In this document: positions 3,556-63,192 of the stretch, piece by piece
How positions within the stretch are numbered: position 1 is the stretch's first letter
How the letters are laid out: each line of letters starts with the position of its first letter
NCBI GenBank assembly: GCA_965644265.1
Contig: OZ286471.1
Span: 46,624,001-46,688,000, forward strand
DNA from: Glycera tridactyla
Taxonomy: Eukaryota
Direction: 5' to 3'
Length of the DNA: 64,000 nt
Translations under genes and position numbers: made by a program
Notes under the pieces: generated by a model
What the model was told of the DNA's origin: nothing
Databases searched by the model: none
Seen by the model: the letters and a program-made list of their open reading frames with translations, nothing else

Positions 3556-3681
3556 GGTGATTGCTATTTTACCCTACTAGCCTGAATGAACAGTGTGTTA
3601 TAGGGAGTAGGACGTTCTGTGCTGATGAGAAATTCAGCTGTCCAGTGATAACAGTGTACCTGGTATAGTTACTCCCGCTTG

Positions 3682-5089: not shown

Positions 5090-6558
5090 GGTGATACACC
5101 AGCATTATGATGATGTGCCAGAAGGTCAAAGGTCAAGGTCAAAGGAGCTATTTTTAGAATTTGATATTTTTCACTATAATTTGACTAAACCTCAACCAGT
5201 ATGGAGAAATCTCACTTGGTGAATTGTTCTAGTTTCCTAGGTCACCATGACCTGATCAAGGGCCTCCCTTGTCAGCAAGATTCCAGTCAAACTGCTGACC
5301 CAAATTCATCTGAACGTCTCTGATGCCTGGGCATATTCTCGAGGACAAATCCTACCCTAGGAGACCCCCCCCCCTGTACCCCAGTACACCTCATACCCCA
5401 AGACACATTGTCATACTTATGACTAGGTATACTACATCATTGGTCACTCAAATGATAATTGGCAATCAATAAAGTCTAGCTGATCAGTGAGCATACTCAC
5501 TCGAAGATGGATGAGCAAGCAGGTGGGAAGCATGCAGGTAGTGAATAATTACACATCTAGGGGGAGACATATTGAGTGAGGAGGTGCCTCACTAAAATTC
5601 TAGTTGGTTACATGAATATCATGCCAACTTGACAACCCTCGCAATAACGGTTTATGTGAGGTGTGTCTGAACTGTCAGCTACTTCAATCTGACCAGATAC
5701 ACATTACCCGATGATGTTACATGCTTATAGACCCGAATCAAACCATCAATCTCTCGATATGAGAATATTTCTGACTTCGAGGGAATTGCCCCAGTTGGGC
5801 GCAGCAGCGTATGTCGCAGACTAATCATAAAGAGTGGTTCACTGCATGTGTTTTTTTCACGTATCTTGATCTTCTCCAGTTCTATCAAACCTCTAACCAA
5901 TATGTATTGAAATAGGCACTGTGAATACACCGTTGATGAATTGTGACCATGCATGTTGTGCTGGGATGGGATATTTGGCAATTTCTAGATATTAGTAAGT
6001 TTCAAAGACAAGATGTTCATTGTGCAGTACAAGTAGATGTGAATGACTGAGTGAGTATACGAGCATGTGAGCATTTGATAGGTGGGTGGCTGAGTCGTAG
6101 GCCATGGTTCTATTCATCTGTTCAGTCAGTCAGTCAATCAGAGATAGTCAGTTGAGTCAGGAAATGAATCAGATGTGTAACTGAGTATGTGATCGGCTGC
6201 GTGACAAGGTTTGTTACTGGATGGTAGATTGAATGAGTGATGTTAGACCCGATGAGTTGAACATTAGGAGAGTTTAAGCTAGCTGAGATCCTGTGAGGAA
6301 ACTGGAGTTAGAATAAGGCAACACTAGTCGAATCAATGGGACTTGGTTGATCTGGATGATGAATGCCTTTTCAGTGCAAGTTCATTGAGGAATCATATAG
6401 CTTGTTTGAACTAACAGAAAACAAATATCAGATGAGCATCCCAGCTTTGTGATAACAAAGTCAGGAGCATATACTTCTGTGTCACTTTCACCTTCTCTGA
6501 TGGATAGCTTTATCAGTACCAATTTTCCAGAACTGAAACTGCTACTGTATTATTGTAG

Positions 6559-6783
6559 CTTTACCACCTCAATGTACTACCCCTGCACCATCATCGACAT
6601 CCCAGCCATCGACCACCACCGACCCCTGCTACACCATGACCATCAGTGGTCCAGCTGGCAGGGCACGTTGTGTTTTCCCATTTGAATATAAAGGTGTGAC
6701 ATACTGGGAGTGTTCAATCCTCGACAATGATCTCGAACTCTGGTGCTACACTGATAACGACGGCCAGTGGGGCAATTGTGGAC
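6559..6783 (+). CDS. FN2 exon E1
   Basis: tgtag|CT TTA...TGT GGA C|gtgagt, 225 nt; xLPPQC-linker-CYTMTISGPAGRARCVFPFEYKGVTYWECSILDNDLELWCYTDNDGQWGNCG; absent from the ORF track (no ATG). Confidence 0.85.
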
Positions 6784-9700
6784 GTGAGTCTCAATGTTTT
6801 TCCAGTTGATGTCATATGCTGTTCGTGTTGAATGTTGCATGAACATTTCTAAGCATGATCTACATTACGAAAACAAAACATTGGTATGAAAAGGGGTCGG
6901 ACCTTGTCTTTGCCAGTGTTGGTTTGACAATGACCTGGAATCAAATGTTCTGCCAATATACATCCACATTCAGTGCACCATGCATGATATTTTCTGTGAG
7001 TCACTGCATGAATAGTATATCGAAACACCTCCTAGTGGGAATTCATAAGCGACTGCTGCTACTACGAATGTTCTCAAGATGATTGGGCGAATATTCTCGA
7101 TAGATGGACATCACAATACATTGCTAATCCTTCTGGTTTTTGAATATGCGCAATATATGACATTTGCTGAAACATAGCTGTGGCGACCACTCAAAAATAA
7201 TCTTATGTTTGCTACAAAATTCCAGGTTGAATATCTCCCGTCATATTTGTGATTGACAGCCAAATCTGCAAAATGTTGGAAAGGCAGCGTCAATATCTGA
7301 TACCCAAATGTGATGGAATATCACCGAGGTGTGCGGATGGTGTCTTATCCGTAATACGTGAGCAAGTGAAATTAGGTAGAGGTGTGTTTGAACTGTCAGA
7401 TACTTCCACTTGACAACCTTTCAGGTTCCCCATCATCTTGTGAGAGTGATGTCTGCAGGGGAGAGAACATCTAGCTTCCATTAACCAGGAACACACGGCA
7501 TACATAATCCTGTGGGTTGATACATGCCGTAAAACCTAAAAAAAAAATGGCTATTCTATCAGAGATGTCTGCTCATATCGTTCACCCACATCATGCAGCA
7601 GCGATGAGGGATAAATTTTCTTCTCCGATTGAATTGAACCACCATACGAAATACCTCCACTCATTTATTTCATTGCACAATAAGTCAATACTATGACTGT
7701 ATAGTCTGTAGTCACAAAGATGCAGGGAGCAGATGCATGCTTCTTTCCAGTTTTCATCATGACATAGGAGTCAATATGCCTCTCGAGCATGCCACGAGGC
7801 ATTGCTGAGCTTCCGCCATGTATTTCAGCGATGGGATGGGGAGGGTGGATAGTGAAGTTACACACTAGAATATCTTGGAAGAGGCTGCTGCAGCCCGGCA
7901 GGTAAGTCTCAAGCAGATTTAGCTTGATAGTAGAATTATGCCGTGAGATGATACTCATGAAACGAACCAGCGAGGAAAACAACCAGACTTTTGGTTCAGA
8001 TAATGATGACAACCACTCCGAAGAATGCCTCTTAGTCTTCCGTTGTGTCGTGGGAAAGGGGGTATTCAGGGAAGGACGAAGGCAGGGGAGTCCGGATATG
8101 AGCCTGGAGTTCAAGCACTTGCGGTAATTCCTCCCAAAGTTCAAAGTTCAAACCACTTATAGCTTCGCTCTTAATGATGCACGCTCGTATGTGATAGTTG
8201 CACTGTTTTTGCCGCCGTTTGCCTATCTAATGCATATCAATTGCCACGCAGTTTTTAGCGCAACTGACCGAACAAGCACTCACTAAGCTTCCAAACACCC
8301 AAGCATGACGACAACTGCACGAGCCTCATCTTGACCTGTACAGGCATGCCTTTTTTGTGGTGTCCAGATTTGTTCATCTCGAATTGACTGCAGACACTCC
8401 CCCTTGTCTTGAATTGCTAGAGAATGCCATTCCAGATGTATATTTGATCAAAATATCTCAGCCATCGATGAAATATCTAATTTTGAATAAAATCACTGAA
8501 AATTTGAATGGAAAATTATTTGCTGGTGTTTTGTCCTAAGCTGGGATGCATTTGTAATGTCTTACATTTGCTTTCATTCTCTTCACTTTTAGCATCATGC
8601 TTGTGAAGGGTCTCCTGATTCTAGCCCGTATAGAGTATATATAATGGGATTGAAAGTATCTCATTTTCTTAATTCTAATATGATACGGCTTGATTTGAAG
8701 AGGCATTGTGTAGTACACAGCTAATCGGAAAATTCTGGACCAGTAGAATCAAATTTTGAGGGATCGCAATGATTCACATAACAAATAATTACTCATCACA
8801 TAGGGTCAATGAAGGAGCCTTCAGGTATGACCCACTCAGGTATGTGTATGTGTATTCGGTAACCTGGAATTAGCCACTTCTGCCCATGCACTCTTGGTGG
8901 TATACATCATGGGGAGATGTGAATGATACACATTTATAACACACTTGTTGCTTTGGAGCAATATCAGATCTAGAAATGATGCTTTGCATCTACATGTGAA
9001 CTTATTTGCTAACCAAAATCATGCCCTGACCACTTGCAGCCGAGATATGTGGCACAACTACAGATACAACTCCAACCACGGTCACCACCCCAACCACCAT
9101 TACTACTACCACAACCGAACCTCCTACCACTACCAATGACTGTTATACACCCACTGAAAGCGGGGAGAACTGTTTCTTCCCCTTTGTCTACAAAAACAGT
9201 GTCTATCGTGAATGCACCACTGCAGGCCACAACGGAGTCCTCTGGTGCTATACCCGGGCAACATTTGCTAGTGATGAGATTTGGTCAAACTGTTTAGGTG
9301 AGTCACCTTTCTCTTGCGTCCAATCTGTTATGTATGCCTCCAGTAATATATGCGATAATGAATGTCACCGTGGACCACTATTCAGAAGGAGGATAAGGAT
9401 CAAACCCCATCAAAATATTGTGGGTGGGGTGCATCTGCACTATCAGTAACGTCCACTCTACAGCGTTTCTGAATCCTCGTCGGCGTTTTATATTTGTGTG
9501 TAAAGTGCTTGGCGGGGACAATGCATATAGATCTCATGATATTGAAATATGCGGTAAACATGATCCCGTAAGTCGACACATGTCACTGAACGCCGACCAA
9601 TTCAATCCAATAAACAATCATCACAGTAGAATAATTTGCGACCCATGTGTGATTGAAGCCAATACCTCCATTCAGGCGGACTATGGCTTTCTATTCACCG

Positions 9701-12700
9701 TTCTAGGTTCTTTGATTGATCATAGAATGGAGCAAATAGCAAGTATGAATCAGTATCTGAATCCAATCAGACATAGCCTGTTTGAATCACTAATAGTGAG
9801 TTTGATCATATCGATGTGCCTTCTCATACCTTAATCATGTTACATTGCTAGTCATTCGGTTTTCGTGATTGAGATACCCTGAGCATTGAGACACGAGATG
9901 TGGTCGTCATATCCTCATCATTGAACTTTTAGATGAAGTCTGTGGAACAACTCCAACTGTTACAACTACTCTCCCAACCACAAGCACAACAACGGTCACC
10001 ACACCAACAACAACGAATAATTGCTATACACCGGTGGTCGATGGGACAGCGGATCCTGACTCGATTTGTTATTTCCCATTCGTCTATAAGAAAACCACTT
10101 ACTGGAAATGTAGCACAAAAAACAATCGTGACGTCCCTTGGTGTTATGTTGATGAGGACTTCAAAAAATGGGGCAACTGTCAAGGTAAAACCGGTTAAGG
10201 CTACTTTCCCTTAAATTGCATGCCAGCCGATATGCCCGGTTATTTTAGCGATGATGTGTACCAACTGCAACCATGCATTCACATAAGCTTCATTTTAGGT
10301 GAGCCCCCCACCACCATGACAGCTGAACTTGCACAGTGAACGTCTCTCACATATAAGGCTAATATTGCCCAACCATGAGAACTCACTGCAAAATGAGCTA
10401 TGGTACATCGACTGTATTACTCTTTCGAATTCAAGTTCAGAGTTGATAAATTGAATCATGCGGATGTGCTTTTTGCTGCAAACTCTAATCCTCGTTAAGA
10501 GGTAAATTCAGCAATTCGTATCAGAAGTTCGGAAAATGAAGTTCGGGGATTAGTCATTGCCAAGCTCAGATCTGTCTTATCAGCATCGAGATGGGGGGTT
10601 AAGCTTAGATCATTGTCAGAAATATCCCAATTATAACTCATTTTCCAACAGTTATATCGAGGAACATGATCATGACTTGTGTGATCTGTGAGATACCGCT
10701 GTGATAAAGGTGGTCTGAACTAGGTGTGATACCGTCAGTGAATACATGAGTGATTCTGTGAGAGGCTCTTGTTTAGTATGACGCTTGGTGACTGTTGTCA
10801 TTACTGCACTGGAACGAGTAAGCATGTTGCATGCTGTACATACATTTTCACACTGTCTTTTACTTCTATTACTGGTTTTTCCAATGCTCTTGTCTTTCGC
10901 TCCGAAACTGTATTCTCTTCTCAAGCTTACATCCTGAGACGCGGGTGAGTTCCCTTTTTCTTAATTTTCTGAGGTTAGAAACTCACATGGTAGTACGTGA
11001 TCGATTATATCTATACGAAACATATTTGTCACATCAAACCTACTGATCTGAGCTGACTTCGGCCACTATTCTGTCCTTCATGTATCAGCCCAAGATGACA
11101 CAATTATACTGGAGTAGACCCAGCATGATGTATAAGGGCGACGGGTATATTCCTGAAGAAGCGACACTCCTTCAGACATATTTGGCGATATTCCTGCTTA
11201 TCCAGGTTCATTCCATTGTATCTACTCCACCTTTCGGTGCACTTGAATGATTCAGGACCGTGGATCTGTCTAGTGACAAATACGAGAGTTGTAGTTTCTA
11301 TGTTGTCCAGGAAGTACTTGTATTTCCCTGGAGGCCGTAAGAAAAAAGCATCCGGACCAGTGGGAATTTTAGCAGTATGTCTTTGTCCCTGGTATAGTCA
11401 GCACAGTACCTTTTTTGAATGGAACTGGTGTATGCTCTGTGCTCTCGCTGTTAGAGAACATTGGCGGATGAATGGTGAAAGTTCTCATACACAATATGAT
11501 GTGCGCTGGTATCACTCATAAGGTGGGGTTCTGCATCTCCTAGTCCCTTAGGTACAAGATGAGATCTGTCATAATCCAAACGATTGCTCTACATGTGGGA
11601 TTAGAGAAAGAGAGAAAGGCTCATTCTTTGAACATTGAGTCATGAAGTAACATGGAATTAGGTTCATTTAAACGTGATGATTTCTTACAGCCGAGGAATG
11701 CCGTTCATTAGCCATTACATCAGCTACCACGGGATTACCTGCGACTACCGAGACCTGCTATATCAGCACTTTGGGAGGGTCAGCTCATGTCAGCTCCATC
11801 TGTTACTTTCCGTTCTTTTACAAGGGCATAATGTATACTGCCTGCTCTACCGAGGACAATCGGGGCATTCCCTGGTGTTATGTATCACCCGATTATGAGG
11901 ATGACCATTTGTGGGGCATCTGTGAAGGTATATATCATTGGGGTCCATTCCATGACTACAGAATGTCACCTTGAATATCCACATATGTGAATGGGAAAGT
12001 TTAGATTCCTATGCTTCCGAGTTTGAAAATGAAGAGTTTAAGGCTAAAATGTTCACATATTGTATTGTTGTCCAAATATGTAGTAGCGCTGGATGTTCCA
12101 AATGTTGCTTGAAAAAGACCGCTGGCAAAAGACTCAATTATCACATTTTATACATTTGTCCTTGACAGTGAATAGTGACATATTTCAAGGCTTGCCATTT
12201 TAGGAGATTTAGAAGGTTTAGAATGTTTGTCATTTGCTGTCCTTTTTCCATTGCTATTAAATGTCTTGGAATAGTTGCAGTGAAGAGAGATTAGTCACTG
12301 AAGTGACCAGTCAGTTCTCCTAGCTTTGGTGGAAAGTGAGGTTAATAGCTAGTCAGTGACCGTTTCGATGAGGTGGATTCCCCCCCCCCCCCCATTTCAA
12401 AAATATAGTGGTGATTCAAAGATAGTGAGTATTATGACCCATTTGCTTCATGTCGCTTGACATTATCTGAAATTCAATTAGCATATGCACCACCCTGTAT
12501 CCGTTCCAGGTGTGATATGTGACATCACATTTCCGATAACCACTGCTGCTGATGTAACAACAGCACAGACTACCACGGACCTACCAATCATAACGATCCG
12601 AGACTCATCAAGCATCACAACTCAGGCGAGCACACCAGAACTCTGTTTCACTTCCACAATTGGTGGTACAGCACCTGACTATTCTAGGTGTAACTTTCCT

Positions 12701-21700: not shown

Positions 21701-22261
21701 ATATAGACATCATACTTTCGTAAGCCGCATCTAATCCATTGAGCAATGCTCCATCTCAGAAGGCGATACTATCAAAATTTGTGGTGTGTCTTTCTGCTGC
21801 AGTATAAATATATTGTGTGCGTCTTCCAAACCATTGGACCTCAAGTGTGGACCTCAAATGATTTTTGGTGCGGCTCCATGCGAGACCTATGATTTTATGG
21901 TCAAAATAGTAGCGGACAGATTTGATGGCCACCATGGATATTTGATCATCTTTATGTGTTATTCTCGTGGTCTCAGGATGACTTTTAGACAACTCCGTTT
22001 GGTAAGAAGGAAAGGCATAGTTGCATAAATTCTGCTATCATTGCTGGGGAAACATATGTTGGATGGTCACTCCTTATGTACTCAATATGTTTTTTCATCA
22101 TTCAGCTAGCACATTCTTTTGCTTGCATCGCTCGAACTGACCAAACGTTGTCAAACTTTAATGCCAAACTCCAACTCAATATTTTTTGTAGCGGATCCCT
22201 GTCTGACTCCCGGAACAACAATGGAAGCAACTTCATCATCAACAATAACAACAACACCAGC

Positions 22262-22292
<31 letters not shown>

Positions 22293-55200: not shown

Positions 55201-58200
55201 GATGAAGGTATATCTTGACACGACCATGTTCAATAGAGTATTACACCAGTTTTCTGAAATATCCACATGCAATACATTGCAGATCAAGTCTGTGGATCAC
55301 TCCCACCCAAGATAACAACCACACCCTTGACAACTACTCTGCCGAAAACGTCATCAGAGCCAAGCTCACTTTCAAGAGGAGCATCAACAATCACGGACCA
55401 GTTCTGCTATATTCCTACAGAAGGTGGCACTGCTGGCAGATCTATATGTTACTTCCCTTTCTCATACAAGGGTAGTGTCCATTATGACTGCATCATTCAG
55501 AACAATGATGGAGTACCTTGGTGTTATACAACTGATGCACCAAAATCAGATCGCCAATGGGCCAACTGTCAAGGTAGATTTTGCATATTCTATTCCACAA
55601 GGATTTAATAACAAACTAATGCACAATATCAAATCGATCATTGCACAAGTAGTACTGAATTGAGTACTAACGAATGTGGCTATGTGAAAGACAGTGGTAT
55701 ACATAGACATACAGGGTGAATGAGAATTGATCAGGAAATTGATTGAACCTTTTCAATCAAAGCAAGTGGTGATATTGTTTCCAAATAGAGCAAATTGTAT
55801 GTGTATACCAAACAATTGGCCTTCATTCAACATATGCTTTTATTCATACCTTCTTTAAAAATTATCAAAGAACCGCCGATGAAGGTACATCTTGACACGA
55901 CCATGTTCAATGGAGTATTACACCAGTTTTCTGAATATGCATATGCAATACATTGCAGATCAAGTTTGTGACAACCACATCCTTGACAATCACTCTGCCC
56001 TCAACTTCATCAGAGCCAAGATCACTTCCAGCTGGAGCGTCACCAGTCTCACATCAGGTCTGTCATATCACCACAGAAGGTGGCACTGCTGGCAGATCTA
56101 TAAGTTACTTCCCTTTCTCATACAAGGAATGACTGCATCATTCAGAACAATGATGGAGTACCCTGGTGTTATACCACTGATACACCAAAAACAGTTCGCC
56201 TATGGGGCAACTGTCAAGGTAGATTCTGGACATTCAATCCCATGACAAGTCGATAACATGCTAATGCACAATATCAAATCTATTGGTGCACGAGTAGCTT
56301 CATTTGAATCGAGTACTAACAAATTTGACTATGGGAGAGATGGATGTATGCTTGGACTAGTTGGTAGGAACCAGCTACGTCTTTATCACCTGCTTGAAGG
56401 TTGTTCTACATACATCTTGCCAGTTGATCTTTATTATCACTGGCAACCACCAATGTCATCATGCTTCGAACCTGTGAAATTCAGCAGTATATATGTTGTT
56501 AAAACCTGACTGCTCATGGAGTTCATACTCACGAGGAAAATTCTTGATATTCAATCAAATGCATGGGATAATTTGTGATATGATATCAGATTGCACAAGT
56601 AATCACGCTGAAGTCAGTGCTGATAAGTGCCATATCAATCATGGAATTTAATTGCACTATGCACTGATTTGCGAGACTTTTATGTATGACCGAGTCATGA
56701 TGGAGTTCCTTCGTTTTACTGAAGCAGGATGCACATCTTTATCAGCCAGATATTTTCTTCCCAATGTGGTTGAAGCTTAATTTTCCACATTTGCTAAATT
56801 TGATAAAAATGCATGGCCTGTGATGACAATTTTTAATGGCTCATTTTAAACTGCGAATGAATTTGATTATGCTTACAGAAGAAGTATGTGGTCCACTTTC
56901 AACACAGATTATTACAGCCCCAGTGACGTCACCCCAACTGACCTCAGAATTGACAGCTGCATCAACAGTCACTGAAGAGTATTGTTTCATCCTCACATCA
57001 GGAGGAACATCTGGGCGATCAGTTTGTCTGTTCCCTTTTACATACAGGGGGGAAGTTTACACTACCTGCACACCAAAAGATAACAATGGAATACCATGGT
57101 GTTACACGTCCAATTCACAATATGGCCGTCTATGGGGCAACTGTGAAGGTAGAGTTTACTTCCCTGATACATAGCACCAGAATATTCGGGTAGTATTTGG
57201 GTAGGAGTTGACATATTCAGTCAATACGTCTGGCTTTTTTTATTGAAGATCCTCATCGACACTCTTCACAGAATAATTTAATTAATTCAGGAATTCGAAG
57301 ATCCAGCAATAATGGTACATACAGGTACATTGTCCAGCGCAATTTCATGAATAAAAGGCCAGCACTAAGGTGAAGTAGAGCATTCATCATTGGAAATAAT
57401 CCCCGCACCTCCTCTTGGCATATTATTGCCAACTGAGCGTCGGACTTATTTGTAATATTTATACCTTCATGATGATATATCTGATGGATAGATTGTGACG
57501 TATGCTAATTTGGTAGCATGAGCAGGTCATCATCGCTGACATGATTTTCTGTCATGAATTCTATGATGACGGAACAGTCATGTTTCATTCTAACATCTGG
57601 AGGAACAGCCAGGAGATCAGTCTGTCTGTTTCCTTTCGCATACAGAGGGAATGTTTACACTACCTGTACAACGAAAGATCATGATGGAATATCATTGTGT
57701 TACACAACCAATATCCAAAATGGTCGTCTTTGGGGCAATTGGGAAGGTATAGACCTGAAACCATATCACATGCATTTAGTGAACTGTTCATGCTATTTCT
57801 GTAGAGTAGATGAATAATACTTTGTTACCTTGAGTCAATTGACTACGCATCATCATATGATAGATACAACGATCTAATAAGTTGATGATGCATAGACAGG
57901 AAGGATCTCAAGTGTGCTTTCAAATTAATTGATGAAGTGAAGTTCAGGCTTCCACCATCGATACCAATATAATGATCGCTCGAAATAGGAGTCTGGGTTC
58001 ATGACAGAAGTGTGTGCTATGCTACTCTTCCTTGTCCTCTTCTATATATAGGGGAGAGAGCTTACTATTTGAATGATTTCTCGAACAACAAATAATGCAC
58101 CAATTTACTCAGTTGAAGAAGTAGGAATATTATGAATCTGGAAGGATTGTTTGCGAAAACTAATCGAATCAAGATGTGATACTATTGGTGCTATCATGAC

Positions 58201-61200
58201 TATCGAATTATTGGAATTGGCGATGACAGGTGGTGAGTAATGTCCATGATTGTAAATCCCCATAGATCAGTTCAAATTATGAAAGCATTGATTTTCTTTT
58301 GCAGAGGAAGTATGTGGTTCACTTCCGACTGACATTAGTACCACTACAGTGATCTCGGCTGGACCAATAACTACTGACACCGTGGTGGTATCCACCATAA
58401 CGAACGAGTTGTGTTTCGTCCTCACGTCTGGGGGAACAGCTGGAAATTCAATTTGTTTGTTCCCCTTTGCATACAAAGGAGATGTTTACACGGCTTGTAC
58501 ACCGAAAGATAACAATGGGATACCATGGTGTTATACCACCAGCATACAGAATGGGCGTCTGTGGGGAAATTGTGAAGGTAGAGAGTTTATTTCAATAATT
58601 TTGTGCCAATATCGTGCTCTGGGAAGGGGGATTGGCATGATCATTCTTTTGATATATAACAATTTCACCATCAGCTTCATAAGAGTACAAGGGATATCCT
58701 GATCACTATGAGTGCTGTTATCCCTAAATCATGTATTATCGATATCTGTGTTGTGGAGTGTGATAATGAAGTTAGCAGTCACATCATTTTGTCCTTTAAA
58801 AAAAAATCATCACCACCATATCAGAGAAAGCATTTATGAATCCGTCAGATAAGTGTTCATTCAGATATATTTTATAGCATTGTGATCAGGGGTTAAGGTT
58901 GAAGCCATTGTTTGCTGATGCCTTGCATTGTAGAGGAAGTGTGTGGCACTTTACCAACAGCATTGAATACGACTCCTCCAACACCGACACAGACGACACC
59001 AGCATCGACTGTTACGACTGAGTTTTGCTATACATTCGCATCAGCAGGAACAGCTGGCACATCAGTCTGTGTCTTTCCCTTCTACTACAAAGGCAATCAA
59101 TACAGTGATTGCACAACACGCGACAATGATGGTGTGCCTTGGTGTTATACAACTCGCTCACCTGAGACTGATCACCTTTGGGGAAATTGTGAAGGTAGAC
59201 GTCAAATAGACTTTAAACTCACATCAGTGTGTTTGTTTCCATTTGACCATTTTGGCATAATGAATAGGCCTATTCGACTAGTCGGTTTCGTTGAGTATGG
59301 CCAGTCCGTTGACTACGTTCTGTATAAGGGTAGTTGCCCAACACTTTTTCGATGCGTACGATCTCAACGGTCATTTGACTACATTGATCTCATTAAACGA
59401 ATCCTATTCGGGTTGGCTACGACCGTTGAGTACATTTCTGCAATGAATACTCAATGGAAACTGAACAGTCAAATAGGCCTAATATTCGTTAATGCTACAG
59501 ACAGCTTCAAACTCAACCTTGGGCAGTCTGTTTTGAAAATGCGTTTCAAAGATTTGGCACTCGTCACCATGTAGAATTTGGAGATCATTACCATCGAATC
59601 TGTTGCTGGGATATGCCCGCATGAGTGGATGAGCGAGGTTGAGTCTTTGGTGACTATCCTTCTAGATTGACATATGTAGAGCAGCATATTATGTCCTCCC
59701 GGAAAATTTGAATCCAGGGTTAGGAGCAAGAATGAAAACCATCTGTCTTCGGTCATGTGTTACTAATATCATCCTGATGAAGTCGGAGATAGCTAATTTA
59801 TGGCTATTCCAGTGTCAGTACTGCTAAAGGCAGGTGCAAAGAACAACCTCACGTAGTGTTTGGAACTGCAACTGGTTCCACCAGGAAATGCTATAGCAGT
59901 GTACTGCAAGCAAAGAACAGGGGTCAATAACTGTATTTTCCAAATATCAGCCAAAGCGTGGAGGAAGCTACCCTTGCACGAACGTCAAAATGCATCTAGT
60001 CACCTGCCAGTCTGCGTTCCGATTCTCTTGAAAGTGATACTGGCGGCCCTCAAAGGTTCGAGACACATGACGTGTATGATCCCAAGGATTGATATATCCT
60101 GAAACACCAGCCGATTGACCCAAATTCTTCTGTTATGGACCTCTGGCTTTTTTTCAGAACAGGTCTGTGGGTCACCACCACCAGAATTAACCACGTCGTT
60201 CATGAGCCAAACCTCAACAGATTCAACCAGCTCACATTTGTCATCAGCACAATCGACATCAACTTCTGCTCTGACACTGACCCCTTCCTACTGCTTTACA
60301 CCAACATCTGGGGGGACAGCAGGCAGCTCAGTCTGCACGTTCCCTTTCTCATACAGAGGGAATGTCTATGATGAATGCACGGCCCGCGACAATAATGGAG
60401 TTCCTTGGTGCTACACAACAAGTTCACCTCAGACTGATCACCTATGGGGAAACTGCGAAGGTAGATGAGCGAGATGATTTGTATTCTTTTCCTTAAATGA
60501 TTGTGTTCTGTGTCATAACAAGAATAAGGGAACAAAATAAAAAAAAATGTCCTTGTGTTCTTCCCATTCAAGTCCGATAAGTGATTGAATCATGATGGTG
60601 GGGTGAAGATTGATGTGAGGACAAAACGATCACCCGAATATCCAAAACTCATTGCAGAGCCCAATAGAGACGTGTGCGATTACATGTGACAGGCACGCTG
60701 GTGTTTGGATATGCTAACAGTCATTTTACATGCCCAAACGATCAAGTTTGTCTGCATTGCTGAGGACAATCACCGATCGTCAAATATTTGTTGCATGCCA
60801 ACCTAATAATTTGGTGATGAAAAATGCCCGATCATGTTGATAAGCTGGGTGGTTGCTCACAGTGAGTGACTGATGCGAAATTCTACTATACAAATTTATA
60901 TAGTAAGACAGAACTCATTGGTACGGACTGATGCATCTGCATGGTGTATACTTTCATCAAGAATAACTGATTCTGTTCTTCAATTCTCTTTCTTTGGTGC
61001 GATCTAATTTTCGTTGCTGAATTTGTCCATAGCACAATCATTTCTTTAAAAATACAATGAATCATTTCCAGATGAGGTTTGCTGTTATGGAACACCAACA
61101 ACTGGAGGAACAGCTGGGGAGTCATACTGTGTATTTCCCTTCTCATACAGAGGAGCCACTTACGACGAGTGTACAACGAGAGATAATGAAGGGTTGCTAT

Positions 61201-63192
61201 GGTGTTATACCACTGAGGGCCCGGATCCACTTTGGGGATATTGCCTAGGTACTGCTGCATTCGATCTTAGACCTCGCCATTCCTTCTCACCTTTTTCTTG
61301 TACCGTGCCGTTATCAACAGCTGCGAAATTCTCACTATAATATCGCTGGATCGATGCCTCCATGGTCCTGATCACCTCACACATTAAACGATCGCATTTC
61401 ATTTCTATCCATTCCATGTTACTGCATAATTTGCAACCTCTGGGTCGGCTTGCCCCTAGTTGTCAGTGATTTGGTAATAGGATGATGGATCTCTTTGGGG
61501 GTGCCGTGAACTTATTGGATCTTCTCGCCGAGGTACCCTTGCCCCTTACATATAGTTCACTTTGCAACTCATTTCCATTCCTCAAAGCCACAAGGTCGTC
61601 TATGAATTCTTTATTTGTAATCCCTATCTTGATACAGTTTTCCATATGATTCTTTCATGTCTCGTGATCCATTGCTGATTTCCATTTTTGTGAATGTGGA
61701 TTTCAGCTGATCCATGTGCCACCAACATCAGCACCACATCAACATCTACAAGTACTGCAAATCCATCTATAACTGCATCCACCCCACAGGAGTCATCAAC
61801 AGTGTCACAAATTGCATCTAGCACCACCACATCTGCAACATCAACTTCAATGTCAACATCCATGTCCGCATCTACAGTCACTCAACAATTTTGCTATATT
61901 CCAACAAATGATGGGACATCAGGCGAGTCCATATGTGTATTTCCATTCTGGTATAAGGGGAACAGATACGATACCTGCATCACCCGAGACAATGGTGGAG
62001 TTCCATGGTGCTACACTACCGAACCCGGAATGGATCGCCTCTGGGGCAACTGCGAAGGTACATAACTACATGTCACACTAAAATGGAACACGAACTTGTC
62101 CATCGTTCTCGATTAAAAATGCATCCTTTTTCACCTACTTGTTTCTATGTAACTTATCAGAATACATCCCAAACTATTCCACATTAGGTTTGGATTGTTG
62201 GAAGAAATGACTCTCTTTATGAATTATACATTCATTCTAGGCATACAGGGAAAAATTGATTTCGTACAGGTGAATGTCTCGATGTATCCAACGTATTGAC
62301 AATCAGACCAGAAGGTACTTTCTAACGATACCACATCCCTGATATACATCCCATGAGTTCCCGAGGTGTCTATTTGGACTCATTGACCATCACATCTCAG
62401 TTTTCGTGGCAAAATCACAAACAGTCCCATGAAAATCCTTATCTGTGGTCTCATTTGTATTGGATTATATGTGTGAGAGGTGCTGTCGAGGTATATCACC
62501 ATCGAAAAATGCACCCAGTTAAGCAAATTACTGATCGCAAAGATTGATCTGCATTGTCCTGTGGCGGGAATCAATTATATGGTACCTTGGACTGAATAGT
62601 ATATGTAGATATCAAACACCCTTATCTAGGTGATGAAACCACACATTTCCTTTTGTAATTGTATTAAACGAACAATTGATCATCACCGTCCTGACATCCA
62701 GTTCGGGATATTTGTTGATGGGTAGATATATAGACCTCAGAGCCATATGGTAATTCTATTGTTCCCACCAGTATTCGTATCCGTTTTTGTTATGACAACC
62801 TGTATTTTGGGTTGGAAACGTGTAAAGGTCTAGCTTATGAATAATATGAACGTTCTGTTATGAATTTGTTCACATTTCAGAGGAGGTATGTGGTTCCCCT
62901 CCGCCGGAAATTACCTCTAGCACAATCAAAGTGTCAATGCAATCGCCAGACATTACTACTAGTTCTTTAAGACCATCAGTGCAATCAACTACGCTACTGG
63001 CAACATCATCCTCGACATCGGACTCATGTTTTATTTCCACAATAGGTGGAACAGCAGGCAACTCAATATGCATGTTCCCATTCAAATACAGGGGTACGGT
63101 CTATATTGATTGCACAACACGTGATAATTACGGAGTTGCGTGGTGTTACACAACAAATTCCGGGACTGATCGATTGTGGGGAAATTGTCAAG
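6559..63192 (+). CDS. Partial giant multi-exon gene: tandem FN2 (six-Cys, kringle-like) modules separated by Thr/Ser/Pro mucin-like linkers; 43 intact exons, about 4,028 codons
   Basis: 43 segments each bounded by a pyrimidine-rich AG acceptor and a GT donor, all phase 1-1, all lengths multiples of 3, no in-frame stops. Each carries the FN2 pattern C-x-F-P-F-x-Y-x-G-x-x-Y-x-x-C...W-C-Y-T...W-G-N-C. Splicing was inferred by eye with no transcript evidence. Start and stop exons were not found. Confidence 0.85.
9040..9297 (+). CDS. FN2 exon E2
   Basis: ttgcag|CC GAG ATA TGT...TGT TTA G|gtgagt, 258 nt; EICG-poly-Thr-CYTPTESGENCFFPFVYKNSVYRECTT...LWCYT...IWSNCL. Confidence 0.9.
   Translation, partial: PRYVAQLQIQLQPRSPPQPPLLLPQPNLLPLPMTVIHPLKAGRTVSSPLSTKTVSIVNAPLQATTESSGAIPGQHLLVMRFGQTV
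9933..10184 (+). CDS. FN2 exon E3
   Basis: ttttag|AT GAA GTC TGT...TGT CAA G|gtaaaa, 252 nt; CYTPVVDGTADPDSICYFPFVYKKTTYWKCST...PWCYV...KWGNCQ. Confidence 0.9.
11691..11927 (+). CDS. FN2 exon E4
   Basis: cttacag|CC GAG GAA TGC...TGT GAA G|gtatat, 237 nt; ICYFPFFYKGIMYTACSTEDNRGIPWCYVSPDYEDDHLWGICE. Confidence 0.9.
12510..12803 (+). CDS. FN2 exon E5
   Basis: ttccag|GT GTG ATA TGT...TGT GCA G|gtacat, 294 nt. Confidence 0.9.
13257..13553 (+). CDS. FN2 exon E6
   Basis: ttacag|AT ACA ATA TGT...TGC CAA G|gtatgg, 297 nt. Confidence 0.9.
14074..14457 (+). CDS. FN2 exon E7 (EVCG type)
   Basis: tttccag|AG GAG GTC TGT...TGT CTA G|gtaggt, 384 nt. Confidence 0.9.
14868..15047 (+). CDS. FN2 exon E8 (linkerless CC type)
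   Basis: tttcag|AG GAG ACC TGC TGC TAT...TGC AGA G|gtagcg, 180 nt. Confidence 0.9.
16165..18972. mobile_element. Non-autonomous foldback DNA transposon, IS3EU-like ends, with internal satellite arrays
   Basis: 99-bp perfect TIRs (TATGGAACGCCATTGGGGAC... / ...GTCCCCAATGGCGTTCCATA). GAAACC is duplicated at 16159-16164 and 18973-18978. No substantial ORF. An alternative reading is a 4-bp TSD (AAAC) with ends at 16164/18973. Confidence 0.85.
16646..18700. repeat. Satellite inside the foldback element: 256-bp units x2, then 150-bp units x5-6, then inverted copies
   Basis: The AAATCAGGCCAGCCCATGGTGCTGCC anchor (TAATC... in two copies) starts at 16646, 16902, 17158, 17308, 17458, 17608, 17758 and 17908. 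Reverse-complement units begin after about 18040. Confidence 0.9.
19292..19714 (+). CDS. FN2 exon E9 (longest linker)
   Basis: tttgcag|AG GAA ATA TGT...TGT TTG G|gtacgt, 423 nt. Confidence 0.9.
20065..20244 (+). pseudogene. FN2 pseudo-exon psi1 (decayed CC type)
   Basis: ENRCYRPVIGGTVDQGISYSHLKYKGDTQYTCAIRDSAGVP*CYTTETYQTDRIWENCL: TGG>TAG stop, first FN2 Cys lost, acceptor reads tttcaa| and the donor is lost; 180 nt, same as E8. Confidence 0.85.
20757..21068 (+). CDS. FN2 exon E10 (EVCG type)
   Basis: ttgcag|CT GAG GTC TGT...TGC ATA G|gtactc, 312 nt. Confidence 0.9.
21513..21686 (+). pseudogene. FN2 pseudo-exon psi2 (CC type) with in-frame TAG but intact splice sites
   Basis: atttcag|AT GAA ATA TGT CGC...TGG TGT TAG (21644-21646)...TGT CTA G|gtatat, 174 nt; EICRGMVTYGGTDGEGYCLFPFFRRGTTYDACTTHDNYGVLWC*TMTTAPRPWGNCL. 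Confidence 0.85.
22192..22578 (+). CDS. FN2 exon E11 (DPC type)
   Basis: ttttgtag|CG GAT CCC TGT...TGC CGA G|gtgatc, 387 nt. Confidence 0.9.
23191..23672. mobile_element. Putative MITE with imperfect TIRs and internal ACTCTCCCG repeats
   Basis: Left CAGTCTTC...AGCCACTCTCCCG matches the reverse complement of the right end CGGGAGAATGGCT...GAAGACTG. About six (A/C)CTCTCCC(G) motifs lie inside. No clear TSD. Confidence 0.4.
23848..23990. other. Assembly gap (143 N)
   Basis: Run of N. Confidence 0.99.
25181..25411 (+). CDS. FN2 exon E12 (VCG type)
   Basis: ttacag|AT CCA GTA TGT GGA...TGC ATG G|gtaaat, 231 nt. Confidence 0.9.
25922..26098 (+). CDS. FN2 exon E13 (linkerless CC type)
   Basis: tttcag|AG GAA GTC TGC TGC...TGT TTA G|gtatca, 177 nt. 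Confidence 0.9.
   Translation, partial: RKSAALALPLMVVLLGTLCVYSPSHTGEPHLTAAPHETMMGFPGVTRQKETADFGGTV
26570..26845 (+). CDS. FN2 exon E14 (DPC type)
   Basis: ttgcag|CT GAT CCA TGT...TGC CGA G|gtattt, 276 nt. Confidence 0.9.
27840..28103 (+). CDS. FN2 exon E15
   Basis: tttcag|AT TAT TGT GGA...TGT GGA G|gtatga, 264 nt; the only junction giving C-x3-C. Confidence 0.88.
29399..29455 (+). repeat. tRNA-Ala-like SINE head or tRNA pseudogene fragment
   Basis: A-box-like TGGCTGATTGG, then CATGCTTCGCATGT (resembles the tRNA-Ala CGC anticodon arm), then B-box-like GGTTCGAAT; no acceptor stem. Confidence 0.4.
30528..30878 (+). CDS. FN2 exon E16 (ICG type)
   Basis: gttgcag|AG AAG ATA TGT GGT...TGT TTA G|gtaatc, 351 nt. 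Confidence 0.9.
31500..31676 (+). CDS. FN2 exon E17 (linkerless CC type)
   Basis: ttttcag|AT GAG GTA TGC TGT...TGT CTA G|gtatac, 177 nt. Confidence 0.9.
32169..32339. other. Assembly gap (171 N)
   Basis: Run of N, just upstream of the 4.4-kb triplication. Confidence 0.99.
32478..32822 (+). CDS. FN2 exon E18 (DPC type, copy A1)
   Basis: tttcag|AG GAC CCC TGC...TGT GAA G|gtagat, 345 nt. Confidence 0.9.
35189..35497 (+). CDS. FN2 exon E19 (EVCG type, copy B1)
   Basis: ttacag|TG GAG GTA TGC...TGC CAA G|gtaact, 309 nt. Confidence 0.9.
35982..36158 (+). CDS. FN2 exon E20 (CC type, copy C1)
   Basis: tttcag|AG CAG GTG TGC TGT...TGT CTC G|gtacat, 177 nt. Confidence 0.9.
36893..37237 (+). CDS. FN2 exon E21 (DPC type, copy A2)
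   Basis: Same boundaries as E18, 345 nt. Confidence 0.88.
39601..39909 (+). CDS. FN2 exon E22 (EVCG type, copy B2)
   Basis: Same boundaries as E19, 309 nt; G>S and I>V relative to B1. Confidence 0.88.
40394..40570 (+). CDS. FN2 exon E23 (CC type, copy C2)
   Basis: Same boundaries as E20, 177 nt. Confidence 0.88.
41305..41649 (+). CDS. FN2 exon E24 (DPC type, copy A3)
   Basis: Same boundaries as E18, 345 nt. Confidence 0.88.
44005..44313 (+). CDS. FN2 exon E25 (EVCG type, copy B3)
   Basis: Same boundaries as E19, 309 nt. Confidence 0.88.
44797..44973 (+). CDS. FN2 exon E26 (CC type, copy C3)
   Basis: Same boundaries as E20, 177 nt. Confidence 0.88.
45720..46019 (+). CDS. FN2 exon E27 (DPC type)
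   Basis: ttttcag|AG GAT CCA TGT GCC...TGT GAA G|gtagat, 300 nt; CFIPTSSGSAGNAICVLPFRYKGTTYNECTTRDNNGVSWCYTT...LWGNCE; FN2 frame absent from the ORF track. Confidence 0.9.
47471..47761 (+). CDS. FN2 exon E28 (D1)
   Basis: ttgcag|AG CAA GTC TGT...TGT CAA G|gtagat, 291 nt. Confidence 0.9.
48305..48595 (+). CDS. FN2 exon E29 (D2)
   Basis: ttgcag|AT CGA GTC TGT...TGT CAA G|gtagat, 291 nt. Confidence 0.9.
49139..49429 (+). CDS. FN2 exon E30 (D3)
   Basis: As D2, 291 nt. Confidence 0.88.
49973..50263 (+). CDS. FN2 exon E31 (D4)
   Basis: As D2, 291 nt. Confidence 0.88.
50806..51096 (+). CDS. FN2 exon E32 (D5)
   Basis: As D2, 291 nt. Confidence 0.88.
51982..52272 (+). CDS. FN2 exon E33 (D6)
   Basis: ttgcag|AA CAA GTC TGT...CAA G|gtagat, 291 nt. 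Confidence 0.88.
52862..52956 (+). pseudogene. Pseudo-exon psi3 (D7): FN2 core and donor deleted
   Basis: Intact acceptor and DKVCESLPPRISTTPLTTSLPKTSSEPSPLLT, then a direct jump into downstream-intron sequence GTTCATAACAAAC; about 226 bp missing relative to D8. Confidence 0.85.
53517..53807 (+). CDS. FN2 exon E34 (D8)
   Basis: ttgcag|AA CAA GTC TGT...CAA G|gtagat, 291 nt. Confidence 0.88.
54449..54739 (+). CDS. FN2 exon E35 (D9)
   Basis: ttgcag|AA CAA GTC TGT...CAA G|gtagat, 291 nt. Confidence 0.88.
55283..55573 (+). CDS. FN2 exon E36 (D10)
   Basis: ttgcag|AT CAA GTC TGT...CAA G|gtagat, 291 nt. Confidence 0.88.
55959..56218 (+). pseudogene. Pseudo-exon psi4 (D11): frameshifting deletions, splice sites intact
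   Basis: 260 nt (not a multiple of 3). There are deletions after TGT G and within TACAAGG...ATGACTGC, and the first FN2 Cys codon reads AGT. Confidence 0.85.
56879..57148 (+). CDS. FN2 exon E37
   Basis: cttacag|AA GAA GTA TGT...TGT GAA G|gtagag, 270 nt. Confidence 0.9.
57554..57746 (+). pseudogene. Pseudo-exon psi5: no phase-compatible acceptor, core residues lost
   Basis: CFILTSGGTARRSVCLFPFAYRGNVYTTCTTKDHDGISLCYTTNIQNGRLWGNWE: last Cys>Trp, conserved W>L, EVC head and linker absent, in-frame TGA at 57542. Confidence 0.75.
58305..58577 (+). CDS. FN2 exon E38
   Basis: tttgcag|AG GAA GTA TGT...TGT GAA G|gtagag, 273 nt. Confidence 0.9.
58934..59194 (+). CDS. FN2 exon E39
   Basis: ttgtag|AG GAA GTG TGT...TGT GAA G|gtagac, 261 nt. 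Confidence 0.9.
60158..60460 (+). CDS. FN2 exon E40 (VCG type)
   Basis: ttttcag|AA CAG GTC TGT...TGC GAA G|gtagat, 303 nt. Confidence 0.9.
61072..61248 (+). CDS. FN2 exon E41 (linkerless CC type)
   Basis: tttccag|AT GAG GTT TGC TGT...TGC CTA G|gtactg, 177 nt; FN2 frame absent from the ORF track. Confidence 0.9.
   Translation: MRFAVMEHQQLEEQLGSHTVYFPSHTEEPLTTSVQREIMKGCYGVIPLRARIHFGDIA
61707..62057 (+). CDS. FN2 exon E42 (DPC type)
   Basis: tttcag|CT GAT CCA TGT...TGC GAA G|gtacat, 351 nt. Confidence 0.9.
62881..63192 (+). CDS. FN2 exon E43 (EVCG type)
   Basis: tttcag|AG GAG GTA TGT...TGT CAA G|gtagat, 312 nt; the open donor means the gene continues beyond this exon. Confidence 0.9.

What the first reader, a model, noticed from the sequence alone, without database searches (positions are those of the whole stretch)
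6559..63192. Giant beads-on-a-string protein: at least 43 FN2 modules on mucin-like tethers, one per exon
Seen: 43 intact exons, each holding one FN2 core and usually a Thr/Ser/Pro-rich linker. They total about 4,028 codons, and both ends are still open. Known: FN2 modules bind collagen/gelatin (fibronectin, MMP-2/9, mannose-receptor family) or choline phospholipids (seminal BSP proteins), and the familiar vertebrate proteins carry only a few each. Inference: this is a secreted or surface, heavily O-glycosylated, highly multivalent binder (adhesive mucus, matrix cross-linker, or microbe/membrane trap). I do not recognise this architecture as a named gene family.
Basis: partly seen in the sequence, partly recalled or inferred. 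Interest (0 to 1): 0.85.

Follow-up and report, generated by a model that had tools for sequence, protein, structure and literature searches.

The report
Giant FN2-and-mucin-spacer repeat gene, 5' part
This stretch of an animal genome holds 43 intact, same-strand exons that each encode one small collagen-binding-type (FN2) domain, usually on a sugar-carrying spacer. They are very likely the first part of one huge, undescribed secreted repeat protein whose ligand, tissue and expression are still unknown.

Summary
There are 43 intact FN2 exons on the + strand (6559-63192), all AG/GT, all phase 1-1. They total 4,028 codons and splice into a stop-free read.

I add these points:
- Four decayed FN2 relics lie in introns.
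- Both N gaps are intronic and cannot affect the frame, but they could hide exons.
- The array grew by tandem duplication of a 1-exon unit (834 bp, about 9 copies) and a 3-exon unit (4,415 bp, 3 copies).
- In the youngest copies, FN2 cores differ by 3.5% against 19-23% in introns (pN/pS 0.21), so the exons are under purifying selection.
- The spliced read has exactly 6 Cys per module, with C-x4-C across 41 of 42 junctions.
- A relative in another assembly carries the predicted exon 2/3 junction uninterrupted in one ORF.
- No signal-peptide exon and no gene start was found in the window.

No protein among 1.84 billion library representatives has more than 24 matched stretches. No paper describing this architecture was found. 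Smaller unannotated relatives exist.

The FN2 pocket is partly altered, so collagen binding is only a guess. No transcript evidence could be obtained.

The scan already found this gene on adjacent DNA downstream (about 290 more modules, unverified here). This window probably holds the 5' edge of the array.

The parts
6559..6783 (+). FN2 exon 1 (75 codons, 17-aa PTS spacer); most divergent module, lacks the E-E-V-C start
   Evidence: Pfam fn2 E 2e-8; phase 1-1, AG/GT
9040..9297 (+). FN2 exon 2 (86 codons, spacer 30)
   Evidence: Pfam fn2 E 1e-12; phase 1-1
9933..10184 (+). FN2 exon 3 (84 codons, spacer 26); its tail nearly matches the relative P0146
   Evidence: relative L002
11691..11927 (+). 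FN2 exon 4 (79 codons, spacer 18)
12510..12803 (+). FN2 exon 5 (98 codons, spacer 41)
13257..13553 (+). FN2 exon 6 (99 codons, spacer 41)
14074..14457 (+). FN2 exon 7 (128 codons, spacer 68)
14868..15047 (+). FN2 exon 8 (60 codons, no spacer, CC type)
   Evidence: Pfam fn2 E 3e-14
19292..19714 (+). FN2 exon 9 (141 codons, spacer 81, the longest)
   Evidence: Pfam fn2 E 1e-11
20076..20240 (+). Decayed FN2 relic in intron 9: in-frame stop in place of the Trp before Cys3, first Cys lost
   Evidence: HMM hits 22.3 + 20.1 bits; translation
20757..21068 (+). FN2 exon 10 (104 codons, spacer 41)
21530..21685 (+). Decayed short-type FN2 relic in intron 10: stop right after W-C
   Evidence: HMM 52.3 bits; translation
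22192..22578 (+). FN2 exon 11 (129 codons, spacer 69, D-P-C start)
23848..23990 (.). Assembly gap 1 (143 N), inside intron 11
   Evidence: the flanking exons are complete and in phase 1
25181..25411 (+). FN2 exon 12 (77 codons, spacer 16)
   Evidence: acceptor 25181 gives the canonical C-x4-C
25922..26098 (+). FN2 exon 13 (59 codons, short CC type)
26570..26845 (+). FN2 exon 14 (92 codons, spacer 32, D-P-C start)
27840..28103 (+). FN2 exon 15 (88 codons, spacer 29); the only junction with C-x3-C
30528..30878 (+). FN2 exon 16 (117 codons, spacer 59)
31500..31676 (+). FN2 exon 17 (59 codons, short CC type)
32169..32339 (.). Assembly gap 2 (171 N), inside intron 17, 40 bp before the tandem 4,415-bp units
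32380..45610 (+). Three tandem 4,415-bp units (97.4-97.9% identical), each holding three exons: D-P-C long, E-V-C-G long, short
   Evidence: self-BLAST
32478..32822 (+). FN2 exon 18 (115 codons, spacer 55)
   Evidence: Pfam fn2 E 3e-13
35189..35497 (+). FN2 exon 19 (103 codons, spacer 42)
35982..36158 (+). FN2 exon 20 (59 codons, short)
36893..37237 (+). FN2 exon 21 (copy of exon 18)
39601..39909 (+). FN2 exon 22 (copy of exon 19)
40394..40570 (+). FN2 exon 23 (copy of exon 20)
41305..41649 (+). FN2 exon 24 (copy of exon 18)
44005..44313 (+). FN2 exon 25 (copy of exon 19)
44797..44973 (+). FN2 exon 26 (copy of exon 20)
45720..46019 (+). FN2 exon 27 (100 codons, spacer 40, D-P-C start)
47471..47761 (+). 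FN2 exon 28 (97 codons, spacer 37); first of nine copies of the ~834-bp one-exon unit
48305..48595 (+). FN2 exon 29 (97 codons)
   Evidence: Pfam fn2 E 3e-12
49139..49429 (+). FN2 exon 30 (97 codons)
49973..50263 (+). FN2 exon 31 (97 codons)
50806..51096 (+). FN2 exon 32 (97 codons)
51982..52272 (+). FN2 exon 33 (97 codons)
53517..53807 (+). FN2 exon 34 (97 codons)
54449..54739 (+). FN2 exon 35 (97 codons)
55283..55573 (+). FN2 exon 36 (97 codons)
56061..56217 (+). Decayed copy of the 834-bp unit's exon (frameshift and stop inside the core)
   Evidence: HMM 29.0 + 46.8 bits in two frames
56879..57148 (+). FN2 exon 37 (90 codons, spacer 31)
57581..57739 (+). Degenerate FN2 relic: open frame, but Trp before Cys3 is Leu, the last Cys is Trp, and the 5' half (Cys + spacer) is missing
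   Evidence: HMM 81.9 bits
58305..58577 (+). FN2 exon 38 (91 codons, spacer 32)
58934..59194 (+). FN2 exon 39 (87 codons, spacer 27)
60158..60460 (+). FN2 exon 40 (101 codons, spacer 41)
61072..61248 (+). FN2 exon 41 (59 codons, short CC type)
   Evidence: Pfam fn2 E 1e-12
61707..62057 (+). FN2 exon 42 (117 codons, spacer 58, D-P-C start)
62881..63192 (+). FN2 exon 43 (104 codons, spacer 45); open phase-1 donor, so the array goes on beyond the window
   Evidence: Pfam fn2 E 1e-10
1..6558 (.). FN2-free stretch upstream of exon 1, longer than any intron of the array; no start or signal-peptide exon recognised; repeat-like ORFs and a microsatellite

Best explanation
The 43 exons are consecutive cassette exons of one large protein-coding gene. 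They are probably the 5' part of an FN2 array that continues beyond the window.

Build of each exon (shown): each is a symmetric phase-1 unit. It encodes first the closing Cys of the previous module (C-x4-C across the splice junction). Next comes a Thr/Ser/Pro spacer of 0-81 residues. Last comes a five-Cys stretch: one extra Cys about 10-17 residues ahead of a four-Cys FN2 fold.

Product (inferred): an extracellular, disulfide-locked string of rigid FN2 beads on extended, probably O-glycosylated spacers. It would act as a highly multivalent binder or cross-linker of a repetitive extracellular ligand. A collagen-like fibril is the first guess and other ligands remain open. Likely settings are mucus, cuticle, tube or matrix. 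This is functionally analogous to peritrophins (chitin-binding domains alternating with mucin spacers) and to the CysD-interrupted PTS regions of gel-forming mucins.

Dynamics (shown): the array expands by tandem duplication of one-exon and three-exon units. It loses modules by decay, which is tolerated because skipping any 1-1 exon keeps the frame.
For: Shown:
- 43 of 43 exons are intact, on the same strand, AG/GT, phase 1-1, with a stop-free spliced read of 4,028 codons.
- Pfam fn2 matches. PDB profile hits go to the FN2 modules of MMP-9, MMP-2, fibronectin and PDC-109. An AF2 model (pLDDT 76.5) matches solved FN2 modules at TM 0.74-0.84 and rmsd 1.6-2.4 A.
- Purifying selection in the youngest paralogues. 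Pairwise mismatch is 19-23% plus indels in introns, 11.6% in the spacer and 3.5% in the FN2 core. There are no indels in exons. pN/pS is 0.21 in the core and 0.58 in the spacer.
- A constraint that spans the splice junctions. The read has exactly 258 Cys, 6.0 per module, and C-x4-C across 41 of 42 junctions. In the seven spacer-less exons the two extra Cys are adjacent.
- A relative (P0146 on L002, NCBI GCA_013332675.1) carries two modules in one uninterrupted ORF, joined by C-L-D-K-V-C-G. The predicted exon 2/3 splice product here is C-L-D-E-V-C-G.
- No signal-peptide-like phase-1 exon lies on the + strand of the window, so there is no sign of a second gene starting inside.
- The same one-exon six-Cys FN2 + PTS build occurs in another organism's contig, with 12 modules in 4.2 kb (L003). 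It also occurs in an intronless 16-module ORF (P0003).

Inferred: secretion, O-glycosylation, multivalent binding.
Against: - No transcript or protein evidence. Two searches with single exons in the 5.8-billion-protein set found nothing, and the genome is not in the contig collection.
- No signal peptide, start codon, stop or other domain type was seen.
- Ligand is unknown. The position 9 residues before the last Cys is Tyr in the aligned gelatinase modules but aromatic in only 8 of 43 modules here. The position just before the last Cys is Phe in the gelatinases (G-F-C) but Asn in 41 of 43 here.
- The three 4.4-kb units at about 98% identity next to a gap could partly be an assembly artefact of a heterozygous genome.
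- Symmetric exons would also allow extensive exon skipping, so the full-length product may never be made.
Confidence: 0.6

Rival explanations
1. A cassette-exon library. The array is one transcription unit, but each mRNA includes only a subset of the 1-1 exons through alternative or stochastic exon skipping. This would give many medium-sized isoforms rather than one giant protein.
For: All exons are symmetric phase 1-1, so any subset stays in frame. Decayed relics lie in introns and must already be skipped. Earlier scan notes report large alternative-exon arrays elsewhere in this genome (unverified).
Against: The sixth Cys of each module lies in the next exon and C-x4-C is kept at 41 of 42 junctions. 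Skipping still gives an even Cys count, so this is only weak evidence against. No docking or selector structure was looked for. No RNA data are available.
Confidence: 0.17
2. A cluster of several separate FN2-repeat genes in head-to-tail order, not one gene.
For: The locus is very long according to earlier notes (unverified). Module types change along the window: divergent exons 1-17, the three-exon units 18-26, the one-exon units 28-36. Some exons have an AATAAA or ATTAAA within 400 nt of the stop reached on reading through the donor.
Against: No signal-peptide-like exon with a phase-1 donor lies anywhere on the + strand. No exon ends in a stop before its donor. Every junction keeps phase and the C-x4-C motif, including junctions between different module types.
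Confidence: 0.13
3. A dead or dying repeat array: a pseudogene or non-expressed exon graveyard.
For: There are four decayed relics. No transcript evidence was found.
Against: 43 of 47 modules are intact with canonical splice sites. The FN2 core diverges 5-6 times less than the neighbouring introns. pN/pS is 0.21 and exons have no indels while introns have many.
Confidence: 0.05
4. The module count is inflated by mis-assembly: haplotypes or collapsed and expanded tandem repeats placed in series.
For: The 3 x 4,415-bp units are 97.4-97.9% identical and begin 40 bp after an assembly gap. Exons 28-32 are 95-97.5% identical at the DNA level.
Against: Three roughly equidistant copies cannot come from two haplotypes alone. 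The nine 834-bp units differ by up to 15% and have different intron lengths, 542-1,244 bp. Even if all three 4.4-kb units collapsed to one, 37 modules would remain.
Confidence: 0.05

Closest known systems
FN2 modules of gelatinases MMP-2/MMP-9 and of fibronectin (PDB 1l6j, 1eak, 1ck7, 1j7m, 2fn2, 3mql)
   Same: Same domain family and fold. The profile aligns end to end (E 4e-38 for the three MMP-9 modules). The model superposes at TM about 0.8. The four Cys, F-P-F, Tyr and both Trp are invariant.
   Different: - Those proteins have 2-3 modules next to catalytic or FN1 domains.
- Here there are at least 43 modules with PTS spacers, two extra Cys per module and a loop one residue shorter.
- Asn replaces Phe before the last Cys (41 of 43).
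- The Tyr of the N-Y-D motif is mostly lost.
- A new invariant Tyr follows W-C (42 of 43).
Unannotated multi-FN2 proteins in public data: Sardina pilchardus XP_062381919.1 (17 matched stretches), Branchiostoma belcheri KAI8499649.1 (19), Macrobrachium nipponense XP_064112099.1 (17)
   Same: Long tandem FN2 arrays. By my reading of its sequence, the amphioxus protein also combines FN2 modules with long Thr/Ser-rich stretches and has a hydrophobic membrane-span-like stretch near its C-terminus.
   Different: - At most 17-24 matched stretches, against 43 in this window alone.
- The fish protein has no spacers.
- The amphioxus modules have four Cys.
- None of these proteins is characterised.
P0003 (ENA ERZ22147071, 1,552 aa, 16 matched stretches), P0146 (NCBI GCA_013332675.1) and the L003 contig (Logan SRR30767271)
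   Same: Same kind of unit: six-Cys FN2 plus a Thr/Ser/Pro spacer, repeated in tandem. L003 has one module per phase-1 exon, as here. The second module of P0146 nearly matches the tail of exon 3.
   Different: - Much smaller as far as seen (2-16 modules).
- P0003 is intronless and has C-x7-C instead of C-x4-C.
- The source organisms are unknown to me.
- No annotation and no literature.
Peritrophins / insect intestinal mucins, and the CysD-interrupted PTS regions of gel-forming mucins (own knowledge)
   Same: They work alike: small disulfide-knotted binding domains alternate with O-glycosylated PTS spacers. This gives multivalent cross-linking of fibrils or a gel.
   Different: - The binding domains are different (CBM14 or CysD, not FN2).
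- There is no homology.
- vWD and cystine-knot ends were not seen here.
Copepod FNII expansion (salmon louse genome preprint, doi 10.1101/2021.03.15.435234)
   Same: It shows that FN2 is not vertebrate-specific and can be strongly expanded in an invertebrate: 192 domains in 74 genes.
   Different: There the domains are spread over many genes, mostly alone or with trypsin. It is not one giant tandem array with mucin-like spacers.

Membership tests
Fibronectin type II domain (Pfam PF00040, fn2) | Profile match above the curated cut-off over the whole 42-position model | tested here: met
   8 of 8 exons tested scored 34.5-53.1 bits against a cut-off of 22.2, covering positions 1-42/42. An HMM built from the modules hits all 43.
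Fibronectin type II domain (Pfam PF00040, fn2) | Four Cys with FN2 spacing and the conserved aromatic core (F-P-F, Tyr, two Trp) | tested here: met
   C-x13-C-x10-C-x10-14-C in 43 of 43 modules. P, F, Y, W and W are invariant in 43 of 43.
Fibronectin type II domain (Pfam PF00040, fn2) | FN2 fold | tested here: met
   AF2 model at pLDDT 76.5. The Foldseek top hits are all FN2 modules (1j7m, 3mql, 2fn2, 5e4k), with TM 0.74-0.84 and rmsd 1.6-2.4 A.
Fibronectin type II domain (Pfam PF00040, fn2) | Binding of gelatin/collagen or phosphorylcholine through the aromatic pocket | not testable with these tools
   The Tyr position of N-Y-D is aromatic in only 8 of 43 modules. The Phe position of G-F-C is Asn in 41 of 43. 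Which residues line the pocket is from my own knowledge.
Kringle domain (PF00051) | About 80 residues, three disulfides, and a match to the Kringle profile | tested here: not met
   Pfam reports only fn2 at E <= 0.01. The module is about 56-61 residues. Kringles (HGF, angiostatin) appear only as marginal PDB hits, E 1e-4 to 9e-4. The six-Cys pattern with C-x4-C resembles the outer kringle disulfide, but the pairing was not tested.
Gel-forming mucins | Long PTS domains | tested here: inconclusive
   The spacers are 60% T+S+P but only 16-81 residues long. Glycosylation was not tested.
Gel-forming mucins | vWD assemblies and a C-terminal cystine knot for polymerisation | tested here: not met
   No domain other than fn2 was found in the exons or in 10 other ORFs of the window. 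The ends of the gene lie outside the window.
Seminal plasma BSP / ELSPBP1 family | Small secreted proteins with 2-4 FN2 modules | tested here: not met
   At least 43 modules with spacers. BSP and ELSPBP1-like proteins are only lower-ranking library hits.

The most novel reading that the evidence does not exclude
This window holds the 5' edge of a single gene whose FN2 array runs on for about 370 kb. Unverified scan notes list at least 66, 82, about 50, 46 and 47 further modules in the next five windows. That gives about 330 six-Cys FN2 modules and about 30,000 residues. Such a protein would rival titin in length and have by far the most copies of one extracellular domain known. It would be a new class of giant FN2 'mucin' of invertebrates.
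Probability: 0.35. Interest if true: 0.85.

Novelty: new variant of a known kind. Interest (0 to 1): 0.62.

Why it matters
FN2 is a textbook vertebrate matrix module, known in copies of one to three per protein. Here it is used as the sole building block of an enormous repeat protein, in a six-cysteine form with mucin-like spacers.

If the gene is expressed as one product, three things would follow:
- It would be among the largest proteins known.
- It would be a natural model of how symmetric exons let a gene grow and shrink by tandem duplication and decay.
- It would be a candidate structural component (mucus, cuticle, tube or glue) with material-science interest.

It also shows that an unannotated family of FN2/PTS arrays exists in several organisms that current annotation and literature do not cover.

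Tried and rejected
- Transcript or orthologue search with exon 9 and exon 29 in the 5.8-billion-protein set gave no hits. The length filter and a missing genome probably explain this.
- Organism identification failed by every route. A search with a repeat-derived ORF gave no hits. Rfam over the window gave nothing. Exact look-ups of two window ORFs were not on record. The L002 pattern was absent from the GTDB genomes. The accession did not appear in any paper.
- Signal-peptide exon: a heuristic scan of 1-6558 gave only weak candidates inside repeat-like sequence. A stricter scan of the whole + strand gave none.
- Seven literature searches for a described FN2 giant or mucin found only the copepod FNII expansion. 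Searches for 'fibronectin type II' also match 'type III'.
- Homology of the gap-2 flank to the tandem unit: only the exon aligns, at 71%, so the gap cannot be interpreted.
- The module tree is poorly resolved because it rests on 56 columns. Only the short-type clustering and the recent duplicates are supported.
- Pfam on 10 non-FN2 ORFs gave nothing.
- I did not fold a full six-Cys module to test the third disulfide, because the tool returns no coordinates.

Full report
**1. What is there**

The window is AT-rich (GC 0.34-0.45) and looks like eukaryotic DNA. A pattern scan of the six-frame translation gives 43 FN2-like cores between 6669 and 63188, all on the + strand. Four minus-strand pattern hits are chance. 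Pfam fn2 (PF00040) matches all eight exons I tested over the full model, at 34.5-53.1 bits against a cut-off of 22.2.

A profile of 31 non-redundant modules (alignment A1) finds the FN2 modules of MMP-9, MMP-2, fibronectin and PDC-109 in the PDB. An AlphaFold model of one module (pLDDT 76.5) superposes on solved FN2 modules at TM 0.74-0.84 and rmsd 1.6-2.4 A. The domain assignment is therefore secure.

**2. Gene model**

- Every core is followed, four bases after its last Cys codon, by a GT donor in the context TGT NNA G|GTA.
- Every core is preceded by an AG acceptor with a pyrimidine tract, just ahead of a conserved x-x-C.
- All 43 exons are phase 1-1 and multiples of three.
- With the acceptors that keep the conserved start, they total 12,084 nt = 4,028 codons.
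- The spliced read has no stop.
- Introns are 356-4,244 bp, median 734.

**3. Assembly gaps (tested first, as asked)**

- Gap 1 (23848-23990) lies inside intron 11. Gap 2 (32169-32339) lies inside intron 17.
- The exons on each side are complete with their own phase-1 sites, so the reading frame does not depend on the gaps. Because all exons are 1-1, hidden exons would not disturb the frame either.
- Physical continuity cannot be tested with the window alone.
- Gap 2 ends 40 bp before the left edge of three tandem 4,415-bp units (32380-45610, 97.4-97.9% identical). The copy number there is therefore uncertain.

**4. Anatomy of the unit**

- The spliced read has 258 Cys, exactly 6.0 per module. 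The last FN2 Cys is followed by C-x4-C across 41 of 42 junctions and C-x3-C at the other one.
- Each exon therefore begins with the sixth Cys of the previous module. A spacer follows, then a fifth Cys about 10-17 residues ahead of the four-Cys FN2 core.
- 36 exons have a spacer of 16-81 residues (median 37; T 29.5%, S 20%, P 10%).
- Seven 'short' exons have none, and there the two extra Cys are adjacent.
- This places the spacer between domains. The fixed Cys spacing across the junctions is a constraint that makes sense only if neighbouring exons are joined.
- Earlier scan notes on downstream windows reached the same C-x4-C reading. I confirm the pattern here, not the disulfide pairing.

**5. 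Is it a live gene?**

- No RNA evidence could be obtained, so I used selection.
- Among the nine copies of the ~834-bp one-exon unit (exons 28-36), mean pairwise mismatch is 19-23% in introns (with many indels), 11.6% in the spacer and 3.5% in the FN2 core. There are no exon indels. pN/pS is 0.21 in the core and 0.58 in the spacer.
- An HMM scan also finds four decayed modules in introns: 20076-20240, 21530-21685, 56061-56217 and 57581-57739. They carry stops, frameshifts or lost invariant residues.
- So 43 of 47 modules are intact. This is a birth-and-death pattern under purifying selection.

**6. Independent support for a junction**

- P0146 is a 173-residue ORF on a 1,156-bp contig of NCBI assembly GCA_013332675.1 (L002).
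- It contains two six-Cys modules joined without interruption by C-L-D-K-V-C-G. It ends at a GTAAAT donor-like site.
- Its second module ends almost as exon 3 does here.
- The predicted exon 2/3 splice product here reads C-L-D-E-V-C-G.

**7. One gene or several?**

- No exon ends in a stop.
- A scan for Met-initiated hydrophobic exons with a phase-1 donor finds none on the + strand, and only weak candidates in 1-6558.
- There is therefore no sign of a gene start inside the window.
- The first coding exon was not found either.
- The 6,558 bp upstream of exon 1 hold no FN2 trace and are longer than any intron of the array.
- All FN2 notes of the scan lie downstream.
- The window therefore probably holds the 5' edge of the array. 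I put this at about 55%.

**8. How the array grew**

- Duplication happened at two scales: a one-exon unit (about 834 bp, nine intact copies plus one decayed) and a three-exon unit (4,415 bp, three copies).
- The three-exon order recurs along the window: a long exon starting D-P-C, a long exon starting E-V-C-G, then a short exon. A D-P-C exon follows every short exon from exon 13 on. It also follows the decayed short relic before exon 11.
- Short modules cluster in a tree, with 0 of 500 shuffles as clustered. Otherwise the tree is poorly resolved.

**9. Comparison with what is known**

- A profile search of 1.84 billion representative proteins gives 5,373 hits. The top hit has 17 matched stretches (Sardina pilchardus XP_062381919.1). 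The maximum among the best 150 is 24.
- Any protein with 43 good modules would have topped the list.
- Named relatives are 'uncharacterized' fish, frog and gecko proteins, an amphioxus protein with 19 matched stretches, and a prawn protein. By my reading of its sequence, the amphioxus protein also has long Thr/Ser-rich stretches and a hydrophobic stretch near its C-terminus.
- The same six-Cys FN2 plus PTS unit occurs in an intronless 16-module ORF from an ENA assembly (P0003). It also occurs as 12 one-exon modules within 4.2 kb of a Logan contig (L003).
- The only relevant paper I found reports an FNII expansion in the salmon louse: 192 domains in 74 genes, not a giant array.
- The architecture therefore exists elsewhere on a small scale but is undescribed. 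The scale here is new.

**10. Function**

- Shown: FN2 fold, Thr/Ser/Pro-rich spacers, even Cys count, purifying selection.
- Inferred: secretion, O-glycosylation, and multivalent binding of a repetitive extracellular ligand.
- The ligand should not be copied from vertebrates. F-P-F, Tyr and both Trp are invariant. However, the Tyr of the N-Y-D motif is aromatic in only 8 of 43 modules (Pro in 18). The Phe of G-F-C is Asn in 41 of 43. A new Tyr follows W-C in 42 of 43.
- That these positions line the pocket is from my own knowledge.
- I commit to a cross-linker or gel-former that works like peritrophins or CysD-interrupted mucins. A collagen-like fibril is the first ligand guess, at perhaps 35-40%.

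**11. Verdict**

- It is a new variant of a known kind.
- The scan has already reported the same gene on adjacent downstream DNA. I could not check the summed size those notes imply, about 330 modules over about 370 kb.

Noticed in passing
window 6559-63192 (spliced read): N-X-S/T sequons are almost absent: 3 in 4,027 residues, against 40.5 +/- 5.3 in shuffles (minimum 25 of 300). This is despite 28% Ser+Thr. Asn sits almost only in the fixed motifs W-G-N-C and D-N-x-G.
   Followed up: partly
window 16565-18942 (intron 8): A block of ~150-bp tandem repeats (82-95% identical copies) lies inside the longest intron (4,244 bp). An earlier scan note calls 16165-18972 a foldback element.
   Followed up: no
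window 1423-3555, minus strand: There are ORFs of 294, 172 and 162 aa. By eye the 294-aa one has an SGNH/GDSL-esterase-like G-D-S motif, as in some LINEs. However, there were no Pfam hits and no hits in the protein set.
   Followed up: partly
window ~4050-4400: A (GT/CA)n-type microsatellite gives Cys-Val and His-Thr repeat ORFs on both strands.
   Followed up: no
L002:268-789 (NCBI GCA_013332675.1, JAAUYI010003260.1): In this relative two FN2 modules lie in one exon, with no intron at the module junction. The one-exon-one-module rule is therefore not universal in the family.
   Followed up: partly
L003:229-4022 (Logan SRR30767271 contig): There are 12 six-Cys FN2 modules with 8-20-residue Thr/Ser/Pro spacers in 4.2 kb. 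About 10 of the 12 have a phase-1-type G|GT donor 4 nt after the last Cys codon. Introns are very short, so this is a compact version of the same gene type in another organism.
   Followed up: partly
window exons 11-13, 14-17, 18-26, 40-43: A recurrent three-part order of module types (D-P-C long, E-V-C-G long, short) suggests an old three-exon super-repeat underlying the array.
   Followed up: partly
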